The notes under the pieces were generated by a model, which worked only from the letters and a program-made list of their open reading frames with translations, was not told the DNA's origin and ran no database searches. The translations under genes were made by a program, and so were the position numbers. Of a DNA stretch of 64,000 bases, positions 9,266 through 26,572 are shown in pieces. Position 1 is the stretch's first letter. Every line of letters begins with the position of its first letter. The stretch lies in sequence record OP079919.1. One strand, given 5' to 3'.

Positions 9266-9636
9266 TGGACGAAAATAACGTAATAGGTCAGACTTACGAA
9301 AGTATTATGTCAGATCGTTTCAAGATGTACGAGTTTAGAACCAAATTGGGTTATGCTCGGTATAACGACCTTTCAGCTAAAATATTTTTTACTATTAAGA
9401 AGATAAGGGCGTTAAAAAAAGAAATCAAAAAATGTCAACGATTAGGCGCCGAGTTGGGTATTTCGGGTAAAACGGTTTATCGGTTAGGGACTCGCAGTTT
9501 TATTGCCGAGCTTAACATGGAACTTGCGTCCCTGCGAATGCTAATCGGTAAAAGAAAAGAAAAAATGGAAGAGTTAAGAAGATTAATTGGCGAGCGCAAC
9601 GACGCTTACAATAAACTTAATAACCTGGAGAAATAA
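9262..9636 (+). CDS. coiled-coil hypothetical protein
   Basis: heptad-like basic sequence, ATGA overlap. Confidence 0.7.
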   Translation: MMDENNVIGQTYESIMSDRFKMYEFRTKLGYARYNDLSAKIFFTIKKIRALKKEIKKCQRLGAELGISGKTVYRLGTRSFIAELNMELASLRMLIGKRKEKMEELRRLIGERNDAYNKLNNLEK

Positions 9637-14253: not shown

Positions 14254-14438
14254 CGCCGACGATGATTTTAGGAAGTTGTTTTGTGGTAGGGGGTTTTATC
14301 TTCCTTTACGTCTTAATCAGAATCTTAATTAAGAACAGCTTAGATGGCTTCGACCGAATGTTTATTGCGGGGGCTGGGTTAACAGCCGTCGGCTTTATTA
14401 TTTTCTCAGCAGGGTTGATACAGGGGGTTGCGCCGTGA
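14250..14438 (+). CDS. small two-TM membrane protein
   Basis: two hydrophobic segments, coupled overlaps. Confidence 0.65.
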   Translation: MTPTMILGSCFVVGGFIFLYVLIRILIKNSLDGFDRMFIAGAGLTAVGFIIFSAGLIQGVAP

Positions 14439-14722
14439 ACGAAGAAACCATTGCGATTATTTTGACAAAAGATAAAGTTATTAACGATCTTCCATGTGAG
14501 CTTCGAGAATGGGTGACTTGCTGGAACCACGAAGGTTTCTTTGTATTAGGTCGATCAGGTCAGTTTCCCTGGGGTACCATTTGCTGCATTGGGGAGGGTA
14601 TTCCCGAGTTTATTACTTCGGAAGAAGCTGAGAAAATATTAATCAAAGCAAAGGCGGTCGCCAAGGTATTAGAAGAGGCATATCACGATTTTGCCAAGAC
14701 GTCTTTCCTTACCCCTGAGTAA
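14435..14722 (+). CDS. hypothetical protein
   Basis: GTGA overlap. Confidence 0.6.
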   Translation: MNEETIAIILTKDKVINDLPCELREWVTCWNHEGFFVLGRSGQFPWGTICCIGEGIPEFITSEEAEKILIKAKAVAKVLEEAYHDFAKTSFLTPE

Positions 14723-14814
14723 AGATTCGGCATTCAACACATCAGGTGGTTACGAACACTACACCGCCAAACGTAGTTTAAAGCCCAGTGGGCTAAGATT
14801 AAGGAATCATTGAA

Positions 14815-16191: not shown

Positions 16192-16599
16192 ATGTTCGTT
16201 CCAATAAACTCCGTGGTGGATGATCGCCCCAAAATAACAGATGACGTTATCAGTATTTCTAAGACCGGACTATGTCGGTTTTACGAGGCCTTTGGTAAAA
16301 AGATCACGGCCGACGGTAATAGTTTGGTGGTAGAGTACGATCCCCTTCTCCGAACTATTCGATTCAAATCTTCGGCTACGGGAAACCGAAAAATAAAAAA
16401 CATGGCGTTTACTATTAAGGGTCGGATCGCTAAAGAGATAGTGGGGTCTATCCTTACTTCTTTCTTACACGGGGCGTATTTCGAGAAGTGTAAACGAACT
16501 GGTTTCAATACCGTGGCTTTTATACCCACTCTAAAAAGCGATGGTTGGTATTATATCGAACCAGGTAAAAGGGTAGGAAAAGGAGAATCATCGTGGTAA
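16192..16599 (+). CDS. hypothetical protein, paralog of 15367-15705
   Basis: TAAGGA RBS; motif match by eye. Confidence 0.7.
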   Translation: MFVPINSVVDDRPKITDDVISISKTGLCRFYEAFGKKITADGNSLVVEYDPLLRTIRFKSSATGNRKIKNMAFTIKGRIAKEIVGSILTSFLHGAYFEKCKRTGFNTVAFIPTLKSDGWYYIEPGKRVGKGESSW

Positions 16600-19009: not shown

Positions 19010-19492
19010 ATGGAACTCGTTAATCAAAAAGTTTATATTGTTAAGCCAGGCGATACTCTGTCAGAGATAGCAAACCATTTTTGTGGGAATCCTGCTATCG
19101 GATACGATATAGCTGAGGACAACGGCATTATCAACGCCGGACTCATCTATCAAGGGCAAAGAATCTGGATAAGGGAGGGATTCCTAAAGGAAGAATTTAA
19201 GGGCGCTCCTAATACCCAACCCAAAGAAGAACCTTTCAGAGAAGGGCAGCATGTTCAAATCACCCCATCTGGTAAATTAACAAGACTGGATCTTCATGAC
19301 TTGTGTTGGAATACCGAACCATTAGCTAAGGGTTTCTTCGTGATTGTCGAAATACATCCAAATCAGACAGAGCTTTTAGTGCAAGATAATAAGAACCGCC
19401 ATTATTACTTCAATCTAAATGAATTGAAGGAACTTATTCGGGTTCGTGGGGCGATAGAAATTTCCCCTAATCGTTTTATGCCGTTTAGCTAA
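19010..19492 (+). CDS. LysM domain protein
   Basis: YIVKPGDTLSEIA..IAEDNGI..LIYQGQRI. Confidence 0.85.
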   Translation: MELVNQKVYIVKPGDTLSEIANHFCGNPAIGYDIAEDNGIINAGLIYQGQRIWIREGFLKEEFKGAPNTQPKEEPFREGQHVQITPSGKLTRLDLHDLCWNTEPLAKGFFVIVEIHPNQTELLVQDNKNRHYYFNLNELKELIRVRGAIEISPNRFMPFS

Positions 19493-19507
19493 ATCCCCGA
19501 GGTTCGC

Positions 19508-19924
19508 ATGAAAAAGATTGTCTTATATTTATTCCCTCGATCTTCGCTCATCCCACCCATGAGTGTTCCACCTACTCGCAAGGCAGACCTCCTAAAAGAG
19601 TTGGAGGATGTTGACGGGTGGATCTCGGATATACAAGAGATCACGGAACTCGGTATTGAAGTTCGACAACACGAATTCCTGATTACCGATGACGGGTTTA
19701 ACGTTATCGCCAAAGAGTGGGAAGTTCACTTTAATGATCCCGACATTTATTGCATGCTCGAAGTATACGGGCTTCCAAAAAATATACGGGATAAAATTAT
19801 TGTCGGACTGAAAGGAATTAAGGAATTATTTACGTCGAGGGTTTGTTCGTTCCTCTCGGTGATTCCTGAAGAAACGATGGTTTTAATCGAAGCTCAACCC
19901 GTCGAAGAAGACGAACAACTTTAG
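19508..19924 (+). CDS. acidic hypothetical protein, paralog of next gene
   Basis: GWISDIQEI vs GWVEDIEDI; similar C-termini. Confidence 0.7.
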   Translation: MKKIVLYLFPRSSLIPPMSVPPTRKADLLKELEDVDGWISDIQEITELGIEVRQHEFLITDDGFNVIAKEWEVHFNDPDIYCMLEVYGLPKNIRDKIIVGLKGIKELFTSRVCSFLSVIPEETMVLIEAQPVEEDEQL

Positions 19925-22433: not shown

Positions 22434-24011
22434 GTGAACGTTCGTGGCGTAAAAGTAAAAGCAGAAACCCGTCAAATTATTGATAACACCGTAGAGCTCG
22501 TTGCAACCGCGGTAACCTCGACCATGGGCCCTAACGGCAAGCTGGTTGTTATTGACGAAACGGGTAATCCTAAAATGACCAAGGATGGGGTGACTGTAGC
22601 GCGCTCTATCCGTTTGGATGATCGGGCAATGGACATCATCGCCAAGATGATCACCGAAGCCTCGATCAAAACGGATGCCGAATGTGGCGATGGGACCACC
22701 ACCACCGTATTCTTAACAAGAGCGTTTTATAACGCCTTTAAAGATAAACTGGATTTCATGACCAAACGCCGGGTGGAAGAGTTAACGAAAGAAACGATCG
22801 AAATGCTCAAAGGAATGACGAAGGTTATTTCTCTTGATAGCCCAGTCCTTCACAATCTGGCGTTAACAACCAGTAATAACGATCTGGATATCGTGAATAA
22901 GCTCTACGATATCTTTAAGACCATACCCGATCCCATGATTGATTATCGTCGGGGTGTAACAGGTATTGACGAGATCGAATACAGTAAGGGCAAGGAATTC
23001 ACAGGCGGGTACGCGCACCCTACTTTCACTAAAGATGGAAGTGGAAGCCCGATTACGATCGAATCGGGTTATGCGTGCATCTTTGAAGGGAAGTTCAGTA
23101 TTCCAGATGACGAGTCGGAATTCCTGAGGCTCTTCGATGAGATCACTAAAAGGGGATATCGTCAGACTATCGTTATCGCACGTGAATTCGACGAACACAC
23201 CCTGATGGTGATGAACAAAATGAATCACGTTATGCTGAAGCAGAAACTGGCGGAGGAACCCGTTTTCATTCCTGTGCGGGTTCAGGCTATCGGAACAGCG
23301 GGAGTGGGGATCATTGGAGATATTGCAACCGTACTGGGGTTAAGTCCTGATGTGGACTATTTAGGTTGGAAGTCTCGTGACTATGAGGTACACTGTATTG
23401 AAAACATTACGGTAAAGGGCGCGGCATTCTTCGTGGGTAGTGTATCTGATGAAGTCTCGGAACGCACAGTAAAGCGCATCGGGCAAATTAAAGATCAAAT
23501 CGATAACTTGCCAGCTGCTCAGAAACACACGCCTTTGGCGAAGATCCTGAGACACCGTATCTCTACTCTGATGGGTAACCGAGTGACTGTAACCGTTGGA
23601 GGAGAAACCGCTTCCGACATCAAAGAACGACTGGATCGATTTGAAGACGTCGGTCGGGCTATCGCATCAGCGTTAACTAACGGCGTCCTTCCGGGCATTG
23701 GTTATTCATTGGCTTATGTTGGTAGTGAGCTGGTGAAGAAATATCCTGACGATTCTATAGTGAAACTGTACGCCGATGTATTGGGCGAGCAGCTTCACAT
23801 GTTGATGGGTCGGGAATTCAATGATCCTGAATTAGTCTATGTCAATCTGGCTACTGGGGAAACCGGTAAGCATCCTCAAGACATCAACGTCTGGGATGCG
23901 CAGTTAGCCACAGTCACTGCGTTAAGGGCTGGTGTCAGCACTGCTATCTCTTTGGCGAGCACCGATACGTTAATTATCGGTAGTCGTGCAGGTGGTGCGG
24001 ATATTCCCTGA
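22434..24011 (+). CDS. groEL: phage-encoded GroEL-like chaperonin
   Basis: TMGPNG, TKDGVTVARSI, GDGTTTT, RFED; GTG start with TAGGAG RBS. Confidence 0.95.
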   Translation: MNVRGVKVKAETRQIIDNTVELVATAVTSTMGPNGKLVVIDETGNPKMTKDGVTVARSIRLDDRAMDIIAKMITEASIKTDAECGDGTTTTVFLTRAFYNAFKDKLDFMTKRRVEELTKETIEMLKGMTKVISLDSPVLHNLALTTSNNDLDIVNKLYDIFKTIPDPMIDYRRGVTGIDEIEYSKGKEFTGGYAHPTFTKDGSGSPITIESGYACIFEGKFSIPDDESEFLRLFDEITKRGYRQTIVIAREFDEHTLMVMNKMNHVMLKQKLAEEPVFIPVRVQAIGTAGVGIIGDIATVLGLSPDVDYLGWKSRDYEVHCIENITVKGAAFFVGSVSDEVSERTVKRIGQIKDQIDNLPAAQKHTPLAKILRHRISTLMGNRVTVTVGGETASDIKERLDRFEDVGRAIASALTNGVLPGIGYSLAYVGSELVKKYPDDSIVKLYADVLGEQLHMLMGREFNDPELVYVNLATGETGKHPQDINVWDAQLATVTALRAGVSTAISLASTDTLIIGSRAGGADIP

Positions 24012-24020
24012 TGCGTTTTA

Positions 24021-24038
24021 GGGGAAGGAAACTTCCCC
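24021..24038 (+). terminator. hairpin with GAAA loop, no immediate U tract
   Basis: GGGGAAG-GAAA-CTTCCCC. Confidence 0.4.
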
Positions 24039-24053
24039 ATTGGGAGAATTTTT

Positions 24054-24311
24054 ATGGACGTTAACACTTCGTCAATTAAAAATTCTAATAATAGACAACA
24101 TAATAATTACAGCGATTCATCCTCCGCTCCGATTCAGTTGGATCGTTCGGGGGAAATTGTCGACGCCAGAACTAAGCTAACAGTTACTGGTGAAATTCCT
24201 CTTCGAAAGTTACCCACTTTCTCAAACCCACCGCAAAGAACAATAAGAGACGATAAAAAACCTTCATCACTCTGGGGGATGGTTAGAGCTCTGTTCTTTG
24301 TATTCATGTGA
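24054..24311 (+). CDS. small hypothetical protein with hydrophobic C-terminus
   Basis: GGGAG RBS. Confidence 0.6.
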   Translation: MDVNTSSIKNSNNRQHNNYSDSSSAPIQLDRSGEIVDARTKLTVTGEIPLRKLPTFSNPPQRTIRDDKKPSSLWGMVRALFFVFM

Positions 24312-24314
24312 TAC

Positions 24315-24344
24315 TATTCCTCTACCCACGTGGGTAGAGGAATA
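24315..24344 (+). terminator. perfect 30-bp palindrome / terminator
   Basis: TATTCCTCTACCCAC-GTGGGTAGAGGAATA followed by poly-T. Confidence 0.8.
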
Positions 24345-24379
24345 ATAACGCTTTTTTATTTTTTAAGGTTATCTCACTC

Positions 24380-24418
24380 ATGGCTAAAATCTATTTCTAT
24401 TACTCCTCTATTGTATAG
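24380..24418 (+). pseudogene. orphaned thymidine kinase 5' end (minigene MAKIYFYYSSIV*)
   Basis: TAAGGT RBS; first 10 codons match the TK N-terminus (cf. E. coli MAQLYFYYSAMN) and parallel the start at 25412. Confidence 0.7.
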
Positions 24419-25441
24419 TAGAAACTCTTATGGGGAAATAGAAATGTCGAAAATTAGTGGTTACAAAGAACATCCGGTAATAAAAAACCTTTTCATCCAT
24501 CCTACGGAAGATAATCACGTCCTGTATGTTAGGAAGAAAAAAGTATCTCGGATAAAGACCCATGTCGGTAAACGCGGATACGTTATTTTTACCATGTGGT
24601 TAAATGGGAAATCCAAGGGTTTTCGCTTCCACAAATTGAAAGCCGAAACGTATCTCAAGAAACCCAGTTCAGACCGCACCCTAGTCGTAAATCATAAGGA
24701 CCATGTTAAGATCAATAACGATCTCGATAACCTAGAATGGGGGACTCAGAAAGAGAATGTCGATCATTCATTAAATATCCGTCAAAAGCTTTGTCCTCTC
24801 TATCGGATAATGGATTTAACTACGGGGAGATGGTGTACAGCCGGTAGTCGTAAAGGGGTAATCGAAATGCTAGCTTGTACCCAACGACAACTCTCTAACC
24901 ATATTAAAGACCCTCGCTATCCATTGCTATTCAAGTGGGAAGTAACAAGGGGTTTTACTTGGAATCTTTCAAAAGATGACGTGGGTAAATATAACCCACG
25001 AGAGCTTCTTCCTTATGTGGTAGAAAAGAATGGCGTCGTTTTTTACCTGGCGACATTAGCTGAAGTTGGTGAATTGACAAAGATCACTAAATACAATATT
25101 ACAGTTGCTTTGAAAAATCAACCAATTCTGCATGCCAAGGGATTCAGCATTCGGTTTATTAATTCTTATGAAGAGTGGATGAAGACTGTTATTGGGAAGT
25201 CCTATATCGATACCATGTTAAATAAAAGTAATAGAAATAAAAAACGGATCGAGGTAATAAACACTCTTACGGAGGAGAAAACCACGTTAAACGGAATTAT
25301 GGAATTAATGGAACTGACTAATTATTCACGACCTACCATCGACAGGGCAATGAAAAATATGTGTGAAGATGGGTGGGTGACTTTCAAAAATCTAAAGATA
25401 AGGTTTATTTAATGGCTAAGGTATTTTTCAATTACGCTGCG
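24410..25441 (+). mobile_element. HNH homing endonuclease cassette with replacement tdk 5' end
   Basis: removing 24410-25441 joins MAKIYFYYSS to MNSGKTT in frame; boundaries approximate. Confidence 0.55.
24444..25412 (+). CDS. free-standing HNH homing endonuclease
   Basis: VNHKDHVKINNDLDNLEWGTQKENVDH HNH motif, NUMOD/HTH-like C-terminal repeats; start moved to ATG 24444. Confidence 0.9.
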   Translation: MSKISGYKEHPVIKNLFIHPTEDNHVLYVRKKKVSRIKTHVGKRGYVIFTMWLNGKSKGFRFHKLKAETYLKKPSSDRTLVVNHKDHVKINNDLDNLEWGTQKENVDHSLNIRQKLCPLYRIMDLTTGRWCTAGSRKGVIEMLACTQRQLSNHIKDPRYPLLFKWEVTRGFTWNLSKDDVGKYNPRELLPYVVEKNGVVFYLATLAEVGELTKITKYNITVALKNQPILHAKGFSIRFINSYEEWMKTVIGKSYIDTMLNKSNRNKKRIEVINTLTEEKTTLNGIMELMELTNYSRPTIDRAMKNMCEDGWVTFKNLKIRFI

Positions 25442-25999
25442 ATGAATTCGGGAAAGACTACTGGTTTGCTGCAATCAGCCTATAATTACGTTGAAAGAGG
25501 AATGTCAGTCTTACTTCTTAAACCTAAACTCGATAATAGAGAAGGAACCGATCCACTAATTAAATCAAGAATAGGATTAGAAAGCGAGTGCGTTTTTATT
25601 CCTGATGATGGGGATGAATTAGTCGACCTCATTCATAATAACAAAGGTGTTTCGGCGATATTCATCGACGAGGTTCAGTTCGTTCCAGTGCGGGTGCTTA
25701 GTGCCATCATGGTGATGTGTGACACCATGGATATTCCTCTTCTTTGCTACGGTCTCCGTAACGCTTATGACGGTAAGGGATTCCCGGGATCTGATTTCTT
25801 ATTACGTCACGCTGATAAACTGGTCGAATGCAAATCCATTTGTTGGTGCGGTAAAAAGGCCACTCACAACATGATGGTTGTCGATGGGAAAGTGGTAAGG
25901 GAAACCACATCAGGGGGAAATATGGTTGTCGGCGGTAATGAACTGTATCACGCCGTATGTCGTCAGCATTTCTTCGAAGGTAAATACAAAGACGATTAA
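25412..25999 (+). CDS. tdk: thymidine kinase
   Basis: AMNSGKT Walker A, IFIDEVQF, YGLR, zinc motifs CWCG and VCRQH; TAATG coupling to HNH. Confidence 0.97.
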   Translation: MAKVFFNYAAMNSGKTTGLLQSAYNYVERGMSVLLLKPKLDNREGTDPLIKSRIGLESECVFIPDDGDELVDLIHNNKGVSAIFIDEVQFVPVRVLSAIMVMCDTMDIPLLCYGLRNAYDGKGFPGSDFLLRHADKLVECKSICWCGKKATHNMMVVDGKVVRETTSGGNMVVGGNELYHAVCRQHFFEGKYKDD

Positions 26000-26018
26000 C
26001 TTATATTTATTTTGAGGT

Positions 26019-26033
26019 CTACATTATCATGGT
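26019..26033 (+). promoter_or_regulatory. conserved intergenic motif CTACATTATCATGGT (candidate phage promoter)
   Basis: 14/15 identical to 41468-41482; both 43-44 nt before a start codon. Confidence 0.45.
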
Positions 26034-26077
26034 GTAAGCATAGTACGTTTTTATTTTCCTTTTTAGGAGTTAACATC

Positions 26078-26572
26078 ATGATGAGCCAACTTGTAAATAT
26101 TCTGAGTGAACACAGATCGGCGTTTATTTGGCCTTCCAACATCCTTCAGTTAGAAGATGAATACTTCTATCTCTCGGTCAAGATTACGGAGAGTGGTGTG
26201 GTCAAATGTATCTTCCGGAACAAGCTCACCAAAGACGTCCGTAAGTTCGACTTCTCTGATAGCATTTTTGATAAAGAGGGGTTATGGGATTACTTCAATG
26301 CGATCGGCAAAGAAGTCTACGCCATTGGGATTGACTACGGTAAAGGGTTCCAGCTGAAGATGTTGTTTGAGCCGATTAAGGCGATGATCACCGATAAGGC
26401 GCATAAGCCTTATAATGGGCATCTTCCAAGAGACGTAAGAGCACCACTGTTTTCCCCGGTTAACGCCCGCAGTATTTATCTCGACGAAAACGGCGAAGTC
26501 ACACTCGATGGCTTCGAATGGGCTTCTCGTGGATTGCAATTAAAAATCATCGAAGAGCTCTTAATTAACTAA
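26078..26572 (+). CDS. hypothetical protein
   Basis: start moved to ATG 26078 (TTTAGGAG-TT-AACATC). Confidence 0.7.
   Translation: MMSQLVNILSEHRSAFIWPSNILQLEDEYFYLSVKITESGVVKCIFRNKLTKDVRKFDFSDSIFDKEGLWDYFNAIGKEVYAIGIDYGKGFQLKMLFEPIKAMITDKAHKPYNGHLPRDVRAPLFSPVNARSIYLDENGEVTLDGFEWASRGLQLKIIEELLIN

What the first reader, a model, noticed from the sequence alone, without database searches (positions are those of the whole stretch)
24365..25460. Homing endonuclease inserted into the tdk start, carrying a recoded replacement 5' end
Upstream of the HNH gene, an RBS (TAAGGT) precedes ATG GCT AAA ATC TAT TTC TAT TAC TCC TCT (MAKIYFYYSS), a textbook TK N-terminus, then ATT GTA TAG. Downstream, the working tdk starts ATG GCT AAG GTA TTT TTC AAT TAC GCT GCG (MAKVFFNYAA), again behind TAAGGT. 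Deleting 24410-25441 fuses MAKIYFYYSS to MNSGKTT in frame. Inference: the element invaded codon ~10 of tdk and rescued the gene with a foreign start that lacks its cut site, needing no intron or intein. This resembles the gene-end replacement known for fungal mitochondrial HEGs.
Basis: partly seen in the sequence, partly recalled or inferred. Interest (0 to 1): 0.85.

Follow-up and report, generated by a model that had tools for sequence, protein, structure and literature searches.

The report
Nuclease gene carrying replacement tdk start
A selfish nuclease gene sits inside the first codons of a jumbo phage's thymidine kinase gene and keeps that gene intact by supplying its own ribosome-binding site, start codon and first ten codons, a trick documented at gene ends in fungal mitochondria but which I could not find described for phages.

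Summary
The window is Klebsiella jumbo phage KPN8. A 12-codon stub (MAKIYFYYSSIV*, 24380-24418) with the native tdk RBS is followed by an intact 322-aa HNH nuclease gene (24444-25412), then a full tdk (25412-25999) starting MAKVFFNYAA. With the 1032-bp insert removed in silico, KPN8 matches L019 at 99.6% over 2952 nt. The insert is present in 9 loci and absent from 7. It occurs as two nuclease types (about 93% identical) under purifying selection (dN/dS 0.12). Each type is 98-100% conserved while sitting in tdk bodies only 87-96% identical, so it spreads laterally. No intron or intein is involved. The nuclease's only structural relative is the nicking homing endonuclease I-HmuI. Three things are unproven: cleavage specificity, immunity of the new start, and its "foreign" origin. 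Its wobble bases match the clade, and the differences fall at non-wobble positions. The closest analogues are fungal mitochondrial endonuclease ORFs carrying replacement C-termini, and the T4 mobA and mobE split-gene cassettes. Verdict: real, interpretation supported, a new variant of a known kind.

The parts
24319..24364 (+). Terminator-like hairpin (CCTCTACCCAC/GTGGGTAGAGG) plus T-runs upstream of tdk. It belongs to the native locus and lies in the left homology arm.
   Evidence: Sequence. Annotated as a terminator in Miami. Nearly invariant in all 13 loci compared.
24364..24369 (+). Native tdk Shine-Dalgarno (TAAGGT), now serving the stub ORF.
   Evidence: The same sequence precedes the intact tdk in all HEG-less loci.
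24380..24418 (+). Stub ORF MAKIYFYYSSIV*. The first 10 codons (24380-24409) are the resident tdk 5' end. The last 2 codons and the stop come from the insert, and a second in-frame TAG follows at 24419-24421.
   Evidence: The stub differs from the isogenic empty-site allele L019 at only 2 wobble bases. Type A stubs match the YYSS native allele and type B stubs match the TYSS native allele.
24410..25441 (+). The 1032-bp insert, made of the nuclease 5' UTR, the HNH gene and 29 nt of replacement tdk start beyond the nuclease stop. The boundaries are ambiguous within about 8 nt (deletion start 24405-24412).
   Evidence: Present in 9 loci and absent from 7.
24410..24443 (+). Nuclease 5' UTR with a G-rich SD (GGGGA, 24432-24436). 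It is predicted to pair with stub codons 4-7, but the prediction is weak.
   Evidence: The pairing appears in all 6 copies folded, but z=-1.27, so it is not significant.
24444..25412 (+). HNH homing-endonuclease gene (322 aa): an I-HmuI-like catalytic domain followed by about 200 aa of repeated helix-turn-helix-like modules. It lies in a different frame from tdk.
   Evidence: Pfam HNH_3. I-HmuI 1U3E by sequence at E=9e-8 and by fold at E=4.7e-6. dN/dS 0.12, and intact in all 6 full copies checked. Modules M2/M3 are similar, 1/500 shuffles.
24540..24773 (+). HNH catalytic core (residues 33-110), including the motif VVNHKDHVKINNDLDNLEWGTQKENVDH.
   Evidence: Alignment to I-HmuI. Invariant H63, H84, K85, N96, N105 across distant homologues.
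25399..25404 (+). New tdk Shine-Dalgarno (TAAGGT), embedded in the nuclease's last codons ATA AGG TTT (the ...KIRFI* motif).
   Evidence: The IRFI motif also ends module M2, where the Arg codon is CGG, so it is genuine nuclease coding sequence.
25412..25441 (+). Replacement tdk start MAKVFFNYAA (type A). The ATG overlaps the nuclease stop as TAATG.
   Evidence: Codons 3-5 (AAG GTA TTT) are invariant in all 9 HEG+ loci. Codons 7-10 vary (NYAA, TFSS, TYSS).
25412..25999 (+). Functional thymidine kinase gene (195 aa): replacement codons 1-10 plus resident codons 11-195.
   Evidence: Pfam TK at E=4.9e-35 covering residues 3-187. The body is 99.8% identical to the HEG-less L019. dN/dS between HEG+ alleles is 0.05-0.12.
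25442..25462 (+). P-loop codons MNSGKTT, immediately right of the insertion point. This is the likely conserved core of the nuclease target, which is an inference.
   Evidence: The insertion point sits directly before the most conserved TK motif.

Best explanation
A free-standing HNH homing-endonuclease gene has colonised the coding sequence of the phage thymidine kinase gene between codons 10 and 11, immediately before the P-loop codons. It uses no intron or intein. Instead the mobile unit ends with a portable gene start. A Shine-Dalgarno sequence is built into the nuclease's own last codons, an ATG overlaps the nuclease stop (TAATG), and ten codons re-encode the displaced N-terminal beta-strand of TK. 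The resident RBS and first ten codons are left upstream as a 12-codon stub closed by two stop codons from the insert.

Shown: the architecture, the natural empty site, the presence/absence polymorphism, purifying selection on both the nuclease and the rebuilt tdk, and a nuclease history decoupled from the backbone.

Inferred mechanism: the I-HmuI-like enzyme nicks or cuts uninterrupted tdk alleles near codons 3-17 during co-infection. Repair uses the stub side and the tdk body as homology arms, and it copies the nuclease gene plus the new start into the recipient. This regenerates a stub from the recipient's own 5' end.

Inferred immunity: the occupied allele is immune because the target is split. 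The stub keeps the left half of the target but lacks the P-loop side. The new start keeps the P-loop side but differs at four fixed bases in codons 3-5 (tdk nt 9, 10, 12, 14) and in the 5' UTR.
For: Architecture and empty site. KPN8 minus 1032 bp equals HEG-less L019 at 99.6% over 2952 nt. The element is present in KPN8, BUCTxx100, phiKp_32, VB_ZK_P1, L021-L025 and absent from Miami, YC1, L016-L020.

Nuclease: Pfam HNH_3. I-HmuI is the only significant PDB relative, by sequence (E=9e-8) and by fold (E=4.7e-6). All 6 full copies checked are intact, with dN/dS 0.12 at dS 0.25 between types A and B.

Lateral spread: type B nuclease genes are 98.0-98.9% identical, yet they sit next to tdk bodies only 87.5-90% identical and in flanks 80-93% identical. 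KPN8 and phiKp_32 have 99% identical flanks but nuclease genes only 93% identical. The three type B loci are identical for only the first 26 nt to the right of the insert.

Stubs track native alleles: type A matches YYSS and type B matches TYSS, as expected if each homing event reuses the recipient's 5' end.

tdk is still selected in HEG+ genomes, with dN/dS 0.05-0.12. Codons 1-10 lie inside the Pfam TK domain, whose match starts at residue 3, so a replacement is needed.

No intron: Rfam is negative and only 34 nt of non-ORF insert exist.

Precedent for gene-end replacement by endonuclease ORFs: PMC3630166.
Against: No cleavage, nicking or homing experiment exists for this enzyme. Its target, its cut position and the immunity of the occupied allele are all inferred. 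I-HmuI-type enzymes are nickases, and how nicks drive homing is an open issue (PMC2988022). The excess conservation of the nuclease gene relative to its flanks could partly reflect ordinary homologous recombination in a highly mosaic population, since the tdk body itself is a recombination mosaic. The L021 and type B new starts differ from native alleles only at codons 3-5 (plus one base in codon 8 in type B), so immunity would have to rest on four bases plus the UTR. tdk is dispensable in some phages, so 'rescue' may matter less than assumed. The structural model is of low confidence (pLDDT 58.6).
Confidence: 0.75

Rival explanations
1. Origin variant A, a foreign start. The nuclease gene originally lay just upstream of tdk in a different phage. 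It entered the Miami clade together with the first ten codons of that donor's tdk, through homologous crossover in tdk on the right and an illegitimate join at codon 10/11 on the left.
For: The TAATG overlap and the SD embedded in a genuine nuclease motif argue for a long association between the nuclease 3' end and a tdk start. The type A new start ends in ...NYAA, whereas all clade natives end in ...SS, and ...YAA endings are common in other TK lineages. It differs from the isogenic native at 7 of 30 nt, whereas natives differ from each other at 2-5 of 30.
Against: No donor was found in the phage collection, IMG/VR, JGI metagenomes, GTDB genomes or the 5.8-billion-protein collection. Wobble bases of the new start match the clade at 8 of 10 codons, while a real ...NYAA orthologue (L078) differs from it at 7 wobble positions. 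Nothing beyond codon 10 is foreign, since the body is 99.8% identical to L019.
Confidence: 0.35
2. Origin variant B, duplicated and diverged. The RBS-proximal 5' end of a clade-native tdk was duplicated when the nuclease gene inserted. The downstream copy then changed at the non-wobble bases the nuclease reads, escaping re-cleavage while keeping a workable beta-strand.
For: 5 of 7 differences fall at codon positions 1-2, against 31% in the tdk body (Fisher p=0.043), and wobble bases are retained. The residue changes are conservative (I>V, Y>F, S>A). The L021 and type B starts differ from natives at only 4 and 5 bases.
Against: The numbers are very small. The 5' UTRs of the two copies differ in length and sequence apart from TAAGGTT. 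The graded series (L021, type B, type A) can equally be explained by crossovers inside the 30-nt segment during homing.
Confidence: 0.4
3. The HNH gene arrived with most or all of a foreign tdk gene as a cassette. In that case the working tdk would be the donor's gene and only the stub would be resident. This was my own intermediate hypothesis.
For: KPN8 versus Miami shows flanks at 99-100% identity but the tdk body at only 72-93%.
Against: HEG-less L019 and L020 carry the same tdk body as KPN8 (99.8%). HEG-less L016 and P0001 carry related bodies. The type B nuclease sits in a Miami-like body in L025. The divergent body is therefore pre-existing allelic mosaicism, not cargo.
Confidence: 0.03
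4. The insert is a group I or group II intron or an intein carrying the nuclease, and TK is made from the upstream start after splicing.
For: The insertion point lies directly before a conserved catalytic motif, which is typical of introns and inteins. The insert length is a multiple of 3.
Against: No intron family scores anywhere near threshold in 24200-25700. Only 34 nt of the insert lie outside the nuclease ORF. Two in-frame stops follow the stub. The nuclease is in a different frame with its own SD and ATG, and no Hint domain is found. A complete second RBS, ATG and ten-codon copy would be unexplained.
Confidence: 0.02
5. The HNH protein is no longer, or never was, a homing enzyme. It could be a domesticated nuclease used in competition or defence. 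The stub and new start would then be a fossil of one old insertion that spreads only by ordinary recombination.
For: There are no activity data. The two nuclease types are old (dS 0.25). The population is highly recombinogenic. Intron-encoded nucleases of nucleus-forming jumbo phages have been linked to inter-phage competition; this point is my own knowledge and was not checked here.
Against: The gene shows a fixed-site presence/absence polymorphism, strong purifying selection, and 98-100% conservation across backbones 87-96% identical, with sharp identity breaks at the junctions. These are the classical footprints of active homing, and competition and homing are not mutually exclusive.
Confidence: 0.12

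Closest known systems
Fungal mitochondrial mobile endonuclease ORFs (mORFs) carrying a replacement gene end: Allomyces macrogynus atp6, and Glomus sp. atp6, atp9, cox2 and nad3 (PMC3630166 and its reference 48)
   Same: An endonuclease ORF is inserted inside a conserved protein gene without an intron or intein. The element carries a diverged in-frame copy of the displaced gene end, so a hybrid gene stays functional. The native end is left beside it as a remnant that closely matches relatives. The inserted copy is markedly more diverged (64-81% in Glomus; 77% for type A here).
   Different: This case is a mirror image: the 5' end (RBS, start codon and 10 codons) is replaced, not the C-terminus. 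The order is remnant, nuclease, new end, rather than new end, nuclease, remnant. The nuclease is an HNH enzyme, not LAGLIDADG or GIY-YIG. The host is a bacteriophage genome, not organelle DNA. The replaced segment is only 30 nt. The nuclease is a separate cistron and is never fused in frame.
Phage split-gene cassettes: mobE in Aeromonas phage Aeh1 nrdA, and mobA plus the gene 60 bypass in the T4 topoisomerase gene (PMC2988022; bioRxiv 10.1101/2022.08.31.505936, citing Bonocora et al. 2011)
   Same: A free-standing HNH nuclease gene is inserted in a functionally critical coding region of a phage nucleotide or DNA metabolism gene. The mobile unit includes extra element-supplied sequence that keeps the host gene working, and in mobA blocks re-nicking. 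The downstream piece gets a new translation start from the element.
   Different: In those cases both gene halves are needed and the two polypeptides reassemble, helped by element-encoded N- and C-terminal tails. Here the upstream piece is a redundant 12-codon stub, and the element re-encodes the displaced residues, so TK remains a single polypeptide. No bypass or tails are involved.
I-HmuI (PDB 1U3E), the intron-encoded HNH nicking endonuclease of Bacillus phage SPO1
   Same: It is the only significant sequence and fold relative of the catalytic domain. It has the same HNH motif and an extended modular DNA-binding tail, and a weak match links the I-HmuI C-terminal domain to residues 191-238.
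   Different: The KPN8 protein has 322 aa against 174, with about three HTH-like modules. It is not inside an intron. Its target gene is tdk, not DNA polymerase. Identity is only about 27-30% and is confined to the core.
Intergenic free-standing seg and mob endonucleases of T4 (PMC2988022)
   Same: The nuclease is a promoter-less cistron that rides on the host transcript. Its stop overlaps the neighbouring cistron's start. Expression signals for the downstream host gene are embedded in the nuclease coding region, which favours retention.
   Different: Those elements sit between genes and cut a neighbouring gene. This one sits inside the ORF, and what it embeds is an SD plus a replacement N-terminus rather than a promoter.

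Membership tests
HNH homing endonuclease (I-HmuI-like) | HNH / beta-beta-alpha-metal catalytic motif present and intact | tested here: met
   Pfam HNH_3 at 28.1 bits, above the cut-off of 24.8. The motif aligns residue for residue with I-HmuI. H63, H84, K85, N96 and N105 are invariant among distant homologues.
HNH homing endonuclease (I-HmuI-like) | Fold similarity to a solved homing HNH enzyme | tested here: met
   In the Foldseek PDB search, 1U3E is the only hit with E<=0.001 (E=4.7e-6, probability 1.00, 133 columns). The model is of low overall confidence (pLDDT 58.6), but the core is modelled at 70-82.
HNH homing endonuclease (I-HmuI-like) | Presence/absence polymorphism at one fixed site among close relatives, with a natural empty site | tested here: met
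   There are 9 HEG+ and 7 HEG- loci, all at the same position. The isogenic pair is KPN8 and L019.
HNH homing endonuclease (I-HmuI-like) | Element phylogeny decoupled from the host backbone (lateral spread) | tested here: met
   The nuclease gene is 98-100% identical within each type, against 87-96% for the adjacent tdk body. There are two types on near-identical backbones.
HNH homing endonuclease (I-HmuI-like) | Site-specific nicking or cleavage of the element-less allele, and resistance of the occupied allele | not testable with these tools
   This needs purified protein and DNA substrates.
HNH homing endonuclease (I-HmuI-like) | Super-Mendelian inheritance in mixed infections | not testable with these tools
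   This needs phage crosses.
Group I / group II intron | Ribozyme core with conserved secondary structure flanking or containing the ORF | tested here: not met
   An Rfam scan of 24200-25700 at E<=10 gave no intron family. The best hits were unrelated families far below their gathering scores. Only 34 nt of the insert are non-coding.
Intein | In-frame fusion with the host protein, with Hint splicing domains and no internal stop | tested here: not met
   Two in-frame stops lie at 24416-24421. The nuclease is in another frame with its own SD and ATG. No Hint domain appears in the Pfam scan.
Gene-end-replacing mobile endonuclease ORF (fungal mitochondrial mORF type) | Endonuclease ORF adjacent to a diverged duplicate of the displaced gene end that is in frame with the host gene | tested here: met
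   The new start at 25412-25441 is in frame with codon 11 onward and is 77% identical to the native 30 nt. It is the mirror image, at the 5' end rather than the 3' end.
Gene-end-replacing mobile endonuclease ORF (fungal mitochondrial mORF type) | Native gene end retained as a remnant closely matching element-free relatives | tested here: met
   The stub differs from the L019 native at 2 wobble bases only.
Gene-end-replacing mobile endonuclease ORF (fungal mitochondrial mORF type) | LAGLIDADG or GIY-YIG nuclease in an organelle genome, replacing the C-terminus | tested here: not met
   This is an HNH nuclease in a phage genome that replaces the N-terminus. It therefore works like that class but is not a member.
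Genes-in-pieces / split-gene HEG cassette (mobE-nrdA, mobA-topoisomerase) | Both fragments encode non-redundant parts of the protein that must reassemble | tested here: not met
   The stub's 10 residues are re-encoded by the new start, and the downstream ORF alone spans the whole Pfam TK domain, residues 3-187.

The most novel reading that the evidence does not exclude
This would be a distinct, self-contained way for a homing endonuclease gene to live inside a coding sequence in a phage, which could be called gene-start replacement. The element's own C-terminal codons have been shaped into the host gene's ribosome-binding site. A ten-codon portable N-terminus is recoded at exactly the non-wobble bases that the nuclease reads, which gives self-immunity. 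The abandoned native RBS and stub are reused as a leader ORF, whose translation opens a hairpin over the nuclease's start and so couples nuclease expression to tdk expression.
Probability: 0.3. Interest if true: 0.8.

Novelty: new variant of a known kind. Interest (0 to 1): 0.62.

Why it matters
Homing endonuclease genes are thought to need an intron, an intein or an intergenic site to avoid killing the genes they target. In phages the only other documented escape is splitting the gene into two reassembling polypeptides. This locus shows a simpler route when the target motif lies near the N-terminus: discard the first ten codons and bring a replacement start.

Natural isogenic occupied and empty alleles exist, along with two nuclease types and three variants of the portable start. 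That makes the system ready for testing several questions:
- How an I-HmuI-type nickase recognises a coding target.
- Which bases confer immunity.
- How short co-conversion tracts can be.
- How such elements shape mosaicism in nucleus-forming jumbo phages.

There is also a practical point for annotation. In the KPN8 record the stub is unannotated, and both the nuclease and tdk are called from upstream GTG codons.

Tried and rejected
1. Cassette hypothesis (the nuclease arrived with a whole foreign tdk). The 72-93% identity of the KPN8 and Miami tdk bodies suggested it. It was rejected when HEG-less contigs with the KPN8-type body were found.
2. Intron. The Rfam scan was negative.
3. Donor search. 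None of the following found the nuclease in any other context or a tdk starting MAKVFF outside HEG+ loci:
   - tblastn of the nuclease and TK against 50,697 phage records;
   - IMG/VR protein-pattern scans;
   - the 5.8-billion-protein word search;
   - an exhaustive phmmer search of 1.84 billion representatives;
   - an 18-mer of the new start in IMG/VR, which gave 0 hits;
   - an 18-mer of the nuclease 5' end in JGI metagenomes and GTDB genomes, which gave 39 and 10 hits, all chance matches with no tblastn support.
4. RBS-sequestering hairpin between the stub and the nuclease start. It is predicted in all six copies folded but is not more stable than shuffles (z=-1.27). I keep it only as a hypothesis.
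5. Other copies or similar stubs in the window. tblastn found no second copy. Comparison with Miami found only small, mutually unrelated divergent patches.
6. Promoter and terminator consensus scan. It gave nothing informative for this phage, with 3 promoter-like sites against 7 expected.
7. Structure prediction of the full nuclease. Confidence was too low (pLDDT 58.6) to define the DNA-binding modules beyond secondary structure.
8. Literature. I found no phage or 5'-end precedent in 7 full-text searches. The library does not cover most subscription journals, so absence is not proof.
Full report
**Identity of the window.** The region 23900-26100 is 100% identical to Klebsiella phage KPN8 (OP079919.1, 256.6 kb). 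It is 99.1% identical to 'Stenotrophomonas' phage BUCTxx100 and 93-94% identical to Klebsiella phage phiKp_32 and Raoultella phage VB_ZK_P1. Klebsiella phages Miami and YC1 match in two pieces spanning only 1169 bp against 2201 bp in the query. Miami is the type species of Miamivirus. A preprint on the core genome of chimallin-encoding, nucleus-forming phages mentions Klebsiella phage Miami (10.1101/2023.02.24.529968; only its title and abstract were seen). The local gene order is a GroEL-like chaperonin (22434-24011), orf85 (24054-24311), a terminator-like hairpin, tdk, orf164 and orf158.

**Checking the observation.**
- TAAGGT at 24364-24369 precedes ATG GCT AAA ATC TAT TTC TAT TAC TCC TCT (24380-24409, MAKIYFYYSS).
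- ATT GTA TAG TAG follows.
- An ORF of 322 codons runs 24444-25412. Its stop overlaps, as TAATG, the start of a 195-codon tdk (25412-25999) beginning ATG GCT AAG GTA TTT TTC AAT TAC GCT GCG and then ATG AAT TCG GGA AAG ACT ACT.
- A second TAAGGT lies at 25399-25404.
- Pfam assigns the 322-aa protein to HNH_3, with weak winged-helix signals at residues 266-313. It assigns the 195-aa protein to TK (E=4.9e-35, residues 3-187), so the first ten codons belong to the conserved TK domain.

**The decisive comparison.**
- Miami and YC1 lack the nuclease gene and read ATG GCT AAA ATT TAT TTC TAC TTC TCT TCG | ATG AAT TCC..., which is MAKIYFYFSS fused to MNSGKTT behind the same RBS.
- The 90%-identity TK cluster has 39 members. 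Among the 15 listed, uninterrupted TKs carry three native N-termini: YFSS, TYSS and YYSS. TKs from occupied loci carry the MAKVFF start.
- P0132 is MAKIYFYYSS followed by a body identical in protein to KPN8 residues 11-195. Its contigs (L018-L020) have no nuclease gene.
- At the DNA level, KPN8 and L019 are 99.6% identical in the left flank (788 nt), 99.8% in tdk codons 11-196, and 99.6% in the right flank (1500 nt).
- Joining the KPN8 flanks in silico leaves 12-13 mismatches in 2952 nt. Any 1032-bp deletion starting at 24405-24412 fits equally well, so the junction is defined only to within about 8 nt of microhomology.

**What is and is not part of the insert.** KPN8 and Miami are about 100% identical up to the intergenic region and 99.1% identical after tdk, but only 72-93% identical inside tdk. 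I therefore first suspected that the nuclease had arrived with a whole foreign tdk. That idea is wrong. The KPN8-type tdk body exists without the nuclease (L018-L020). Related bodies exist in the HEG-less L016 and L017. A type B nuclease sits next to a Miami-like body in L025. The tdk body is a recombination mosaic in this phage population, independent of the element. The insert is only the 34-nt leader, the nuclease gene and 29 nt beyond its stop.

**Junction variation.** All nine occupied loci share the left junction ...TC(T/C) TCT|ATT GTA TAG TAG and the first six codons of the new start (ATG GCT AAG GTA TTT TTC).
- Stubs come in two forms that match circulating native alleles: type A is ...TAT TAC (YYSS, as in L019) and type B is ...ACT TAC (TYSS, as in L016). 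Each differs from its native counterpart at two wobble bases only.
- Codons 7-10 of the new start are AAT TAC GCT GCG in KPN8, BUCTxx100 and L022-L024. They are ACT TTC TCT TCG in phiKp_32, VB_ZK_P1 and L025. They are ACT TAC TCT TCG in L021, which is identical to the L016 native sequence.
- The only differences fixed between every empty-site allele and every new start are tdk nt 9 (A>G), 10 (A>G), 12 (Y>A) and 14 (A>T), plus the different 5' UTR.

**The nuclease is functional and mobile.**
- All six full-length copies checked are intact. Types A and B differ at dS 0.25 with dN/dS 0.12, which is as constrained as tdk itself (0.05-0.12).
- Within each type the nuclease genes are 98.0-100% identical, while the adjacent tdk bodies are 87.5-96.4% identical and the flanks are as low as 80-93%.
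- Conversely, KPN8 and phiKp_32 have 99% identical flanks but nuclease genes of different types (93.2%).
- The three type B loci are identical for only 26 nt to the right of the insert before diverging.

The sharp identity breaks at both junctions, the fixed insertion site and the presence/absence polymorphism are the classical footprints of homing with very short co-conversion tracts.

**What kind of nuclease it is.**
- The catalytic core (residues 33-110) aligns with I-HmuI (1U3E) by sequence at E=9e-8, including the HNH motif.
- I-HmuI is the only significant fold match (E=4.7e-6, probability 1.00). The AlphaFold model is weak overall (pLDDT 58.6).
- After the core, the model shows three beta-beta-alpha-alpha-beta modules. 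Modules 2 and 3 are significantly similar (1 of 500 shuffles), and both end in (S/K)IRFI. This motif aligned with the GYTFRY end of the I-HmuI DNA-binding domain.
- In an exhaustive search of 1.84 billion representative proteins, only the protein's own cluster matches over its full length. All other hits share just the HNH domain.
- I-HmuI-type and Mob enzymes are nickases with long asymmetric sites (PMC2988022). A multi-module tail is consistent with a footprint reaching from codon 3 to beyond the P-loop codons, but this is inference.

**How the host gene is kept working.** The new Shine-Dalgarno (TAAGGT, 25399-25404) lies inside the nuclease codons ATA AGG TTT, which encode the IRF of the terminal IRFI motif. 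The same motif in module 2 uses CGG for the arginine. So the tdk RBS is built from genuine nuclease coding sequence. The tdk ATG overlaps the nuclease stop, and ten codons re-encode the N-terminal strand with conservative changes (I4V, Y5F, Y7N, S9A, S10A in type A; only I4V and Y5F in L021). tdk remains under purifying selection among occupied genomes. The review of T4 elements notes an analogous arrangement, in which signals for downstream host genes are embedded in seg and mob coding regions and favour retention (PMC2988022).

**Not an intron or intein.** Rfam, searched permissively across 24200-25700, returns no intron family. Only 34 nt of the insert lie outside the nuclease ORF. Two in-frame stops close the stub. 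The nuclease is in another frame and has no Hint domain.

**Proposed mechanism (inferred).** During co-infection the nuclease nicks or cuts uninterrupted tdk alleles near the codon 3-17 region. Repair templated by the occupied allele uses the 5' region (stub side) and the tdk body as homology arms, and copies the nuclease gene plus the new start. The recipient's own first ten codons become the new stub, which explains why stubs track native alleles. The occupied allele would be immune because the target is divided. The stub retains the left half but is followed by ATTGTATAG instead of the P-loop codons. The new start retains the P-loop side but carries the four fixed substitutions and a different UTR. 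The graded series of new starts suggests that right-hand crossovers can fall inside the 30-nt segment.

**Is the new start foreign?** This is unresolved.
- For a foreign origin: natives all end in ...SS, whereas type A ends in ...AA, as many other TK lineages do. Type A differs from its isogenic native at 7 of 30 nt.
- Against: it keeps the clade's wobble bases at 8 of 10 codons, and 5 of its 7 differences are at codon positions 1-2, compared with 31% in the tdk body (Fisher p=0.043). A real MAKLYFNYAA orthologue (L078) differs from it at 7 wobble positions. No donor was found anywhere.

A clade-internal copy altered at the non-wobble bases that a nuclease would read is at least as likely as a foreign origin. 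The numbers are small.

**A possible regulatory use of the stub (weak).** In all six occupied loci folded, the minimum-energy fold pairs stub codons 4-7 with the nuclease SD-AUG region. The stability is not better than shuffles (z=-1.27). The stub keeps a strong RBS and start in every copy, which may simply reflect regeneration at each homing event.

**Comparison with what is known.**
- The closest functional analogue is the fungal mitochondrial mORF class: an endonuclease ORF plus a diverged in-frame C-terminal gene end, with the native C-terminus left as a remnant (Allomyces atp6; Glomus atp6, atp9, cox2, nad3; PMC3630166). The phage case is the mirror image at the 5' end, uses an HNH enzyme, and must also supply an RBS and a start codon.
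- Within phages, nuclease genes inside ORFs are documented as intron-borne, intein-borne, or gene-splitting. Examples of gene-splitting are mobE in Aeh1 nrdA and mobA in the T4 topoisomerase gene, the latter with element-supplied N- and C-terminal tails and a bypass cassette that blocks re-nicking (PMC2988022; 10.1101/2022.08.31.505936).
- In the tdk case the upstream fragment is redundant rather than required, so this is not a genes-in-pieces arrangement.
- The T4 mobile-element review contains no occurrence of 'duplicat', and my full-text searches found no phage or 5'-end precedent. The library is incomplete, so absence there is not proof.

**Verdict.** Enzyme specificity, immunity and the origin of the replacement start remain inferences. 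This is a new variant of a known kind of element. It is moderately surprising to a specialist and unusually testable, because natural occupied and empty isogenic alleles and several junction variants are already in hand.

Noticed in passing
window 24330-25412 and 25373-25999: The public KPN8 record appears to call the nuclease from GTG 24330 (360 aa, running across the stub in another frame) and tdk from GTG 25373 (208 aa). phiKp_32 also has the 208-aa tdk call. The stub ORF is unannotated in all five isolate records.
   Followed up: partly
window 25442-25999 (tdk body), strongest at about 25600-25800: The tdk body is a strong recombination mosaic across the clade. There are two haplotype blocks only 72-81% identical over about 200 nt, flanked by 99-100% identical DNA. 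The mosaic is independent of the nuclease's presence.
   Followed up: partly
window 23300-23500 (inside the GroEL-like chaperonin gene 22434-24011): A 200-nt patch where Miami is only 83-86% identical to KPN8, phiKp_32 and YC1, inside an otherwise 96-100% identical phage-encoded chaperonin gene. It is another short mosaic tract.
   Followed up: no
L005 (OR529409.1): The record 'Stenotrophomonas phage BUCTxx100' is 99.1% identical to Klebsiella phage KPN8 across this locus, including the same type A element. The host label looks surprising for such a close relative of Klebsiella and Raoultella phages.
   Followed up: no
window 24810-25409 (nuclease residues about 117-322): The 23 amino-acid differences between nuclease types A and B are concentrated in the DNA-binding two-thirds (20 in residues 117-322 against 3 in residues 1-116). 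The two types are associated with different new-start variants, A with NYAA and B with TFSS. This may indicate co-evolution of specificity and immunity.
   Followed up: no
window ~1814-2158, 9268-9612, 14405-14813, 16195-16593, 19250-19849: Five short segments (345-600 bp) have no megablast-level match in the collinear Miami genome. They are unrelated to each other and overlap small ORFs, so they look like ORFan replacements rather than mobile elements.
   Followed up: partly
L016 4589-5013: In this HEG-less metagenomic contig, no gene is called in the position of the 164-aa ORF that follows tdk in every other locus. There is a 425-nt gap before the 158-aa ORF, and the right-flank identity is only about 78%.
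   Followed up: no
protein P0125 (WP_275276238.1): A Miami-type TK is recorded under Klebsiella quasipneumoniae on a 251,651-bp contig. This is apparently a complete Miami-like phage genome sitting in a bacterial assembly.
   Followed up: no
phiKp_32 (LC768500.1), outside the fetched locus: tblastn of the nuclease finds three places in phiKp_32 but only one in KPN8. That phage therefore carries two further HNH-domain genes, and I did not check whether they use a similar gene-end replacement.
   Followed up: no
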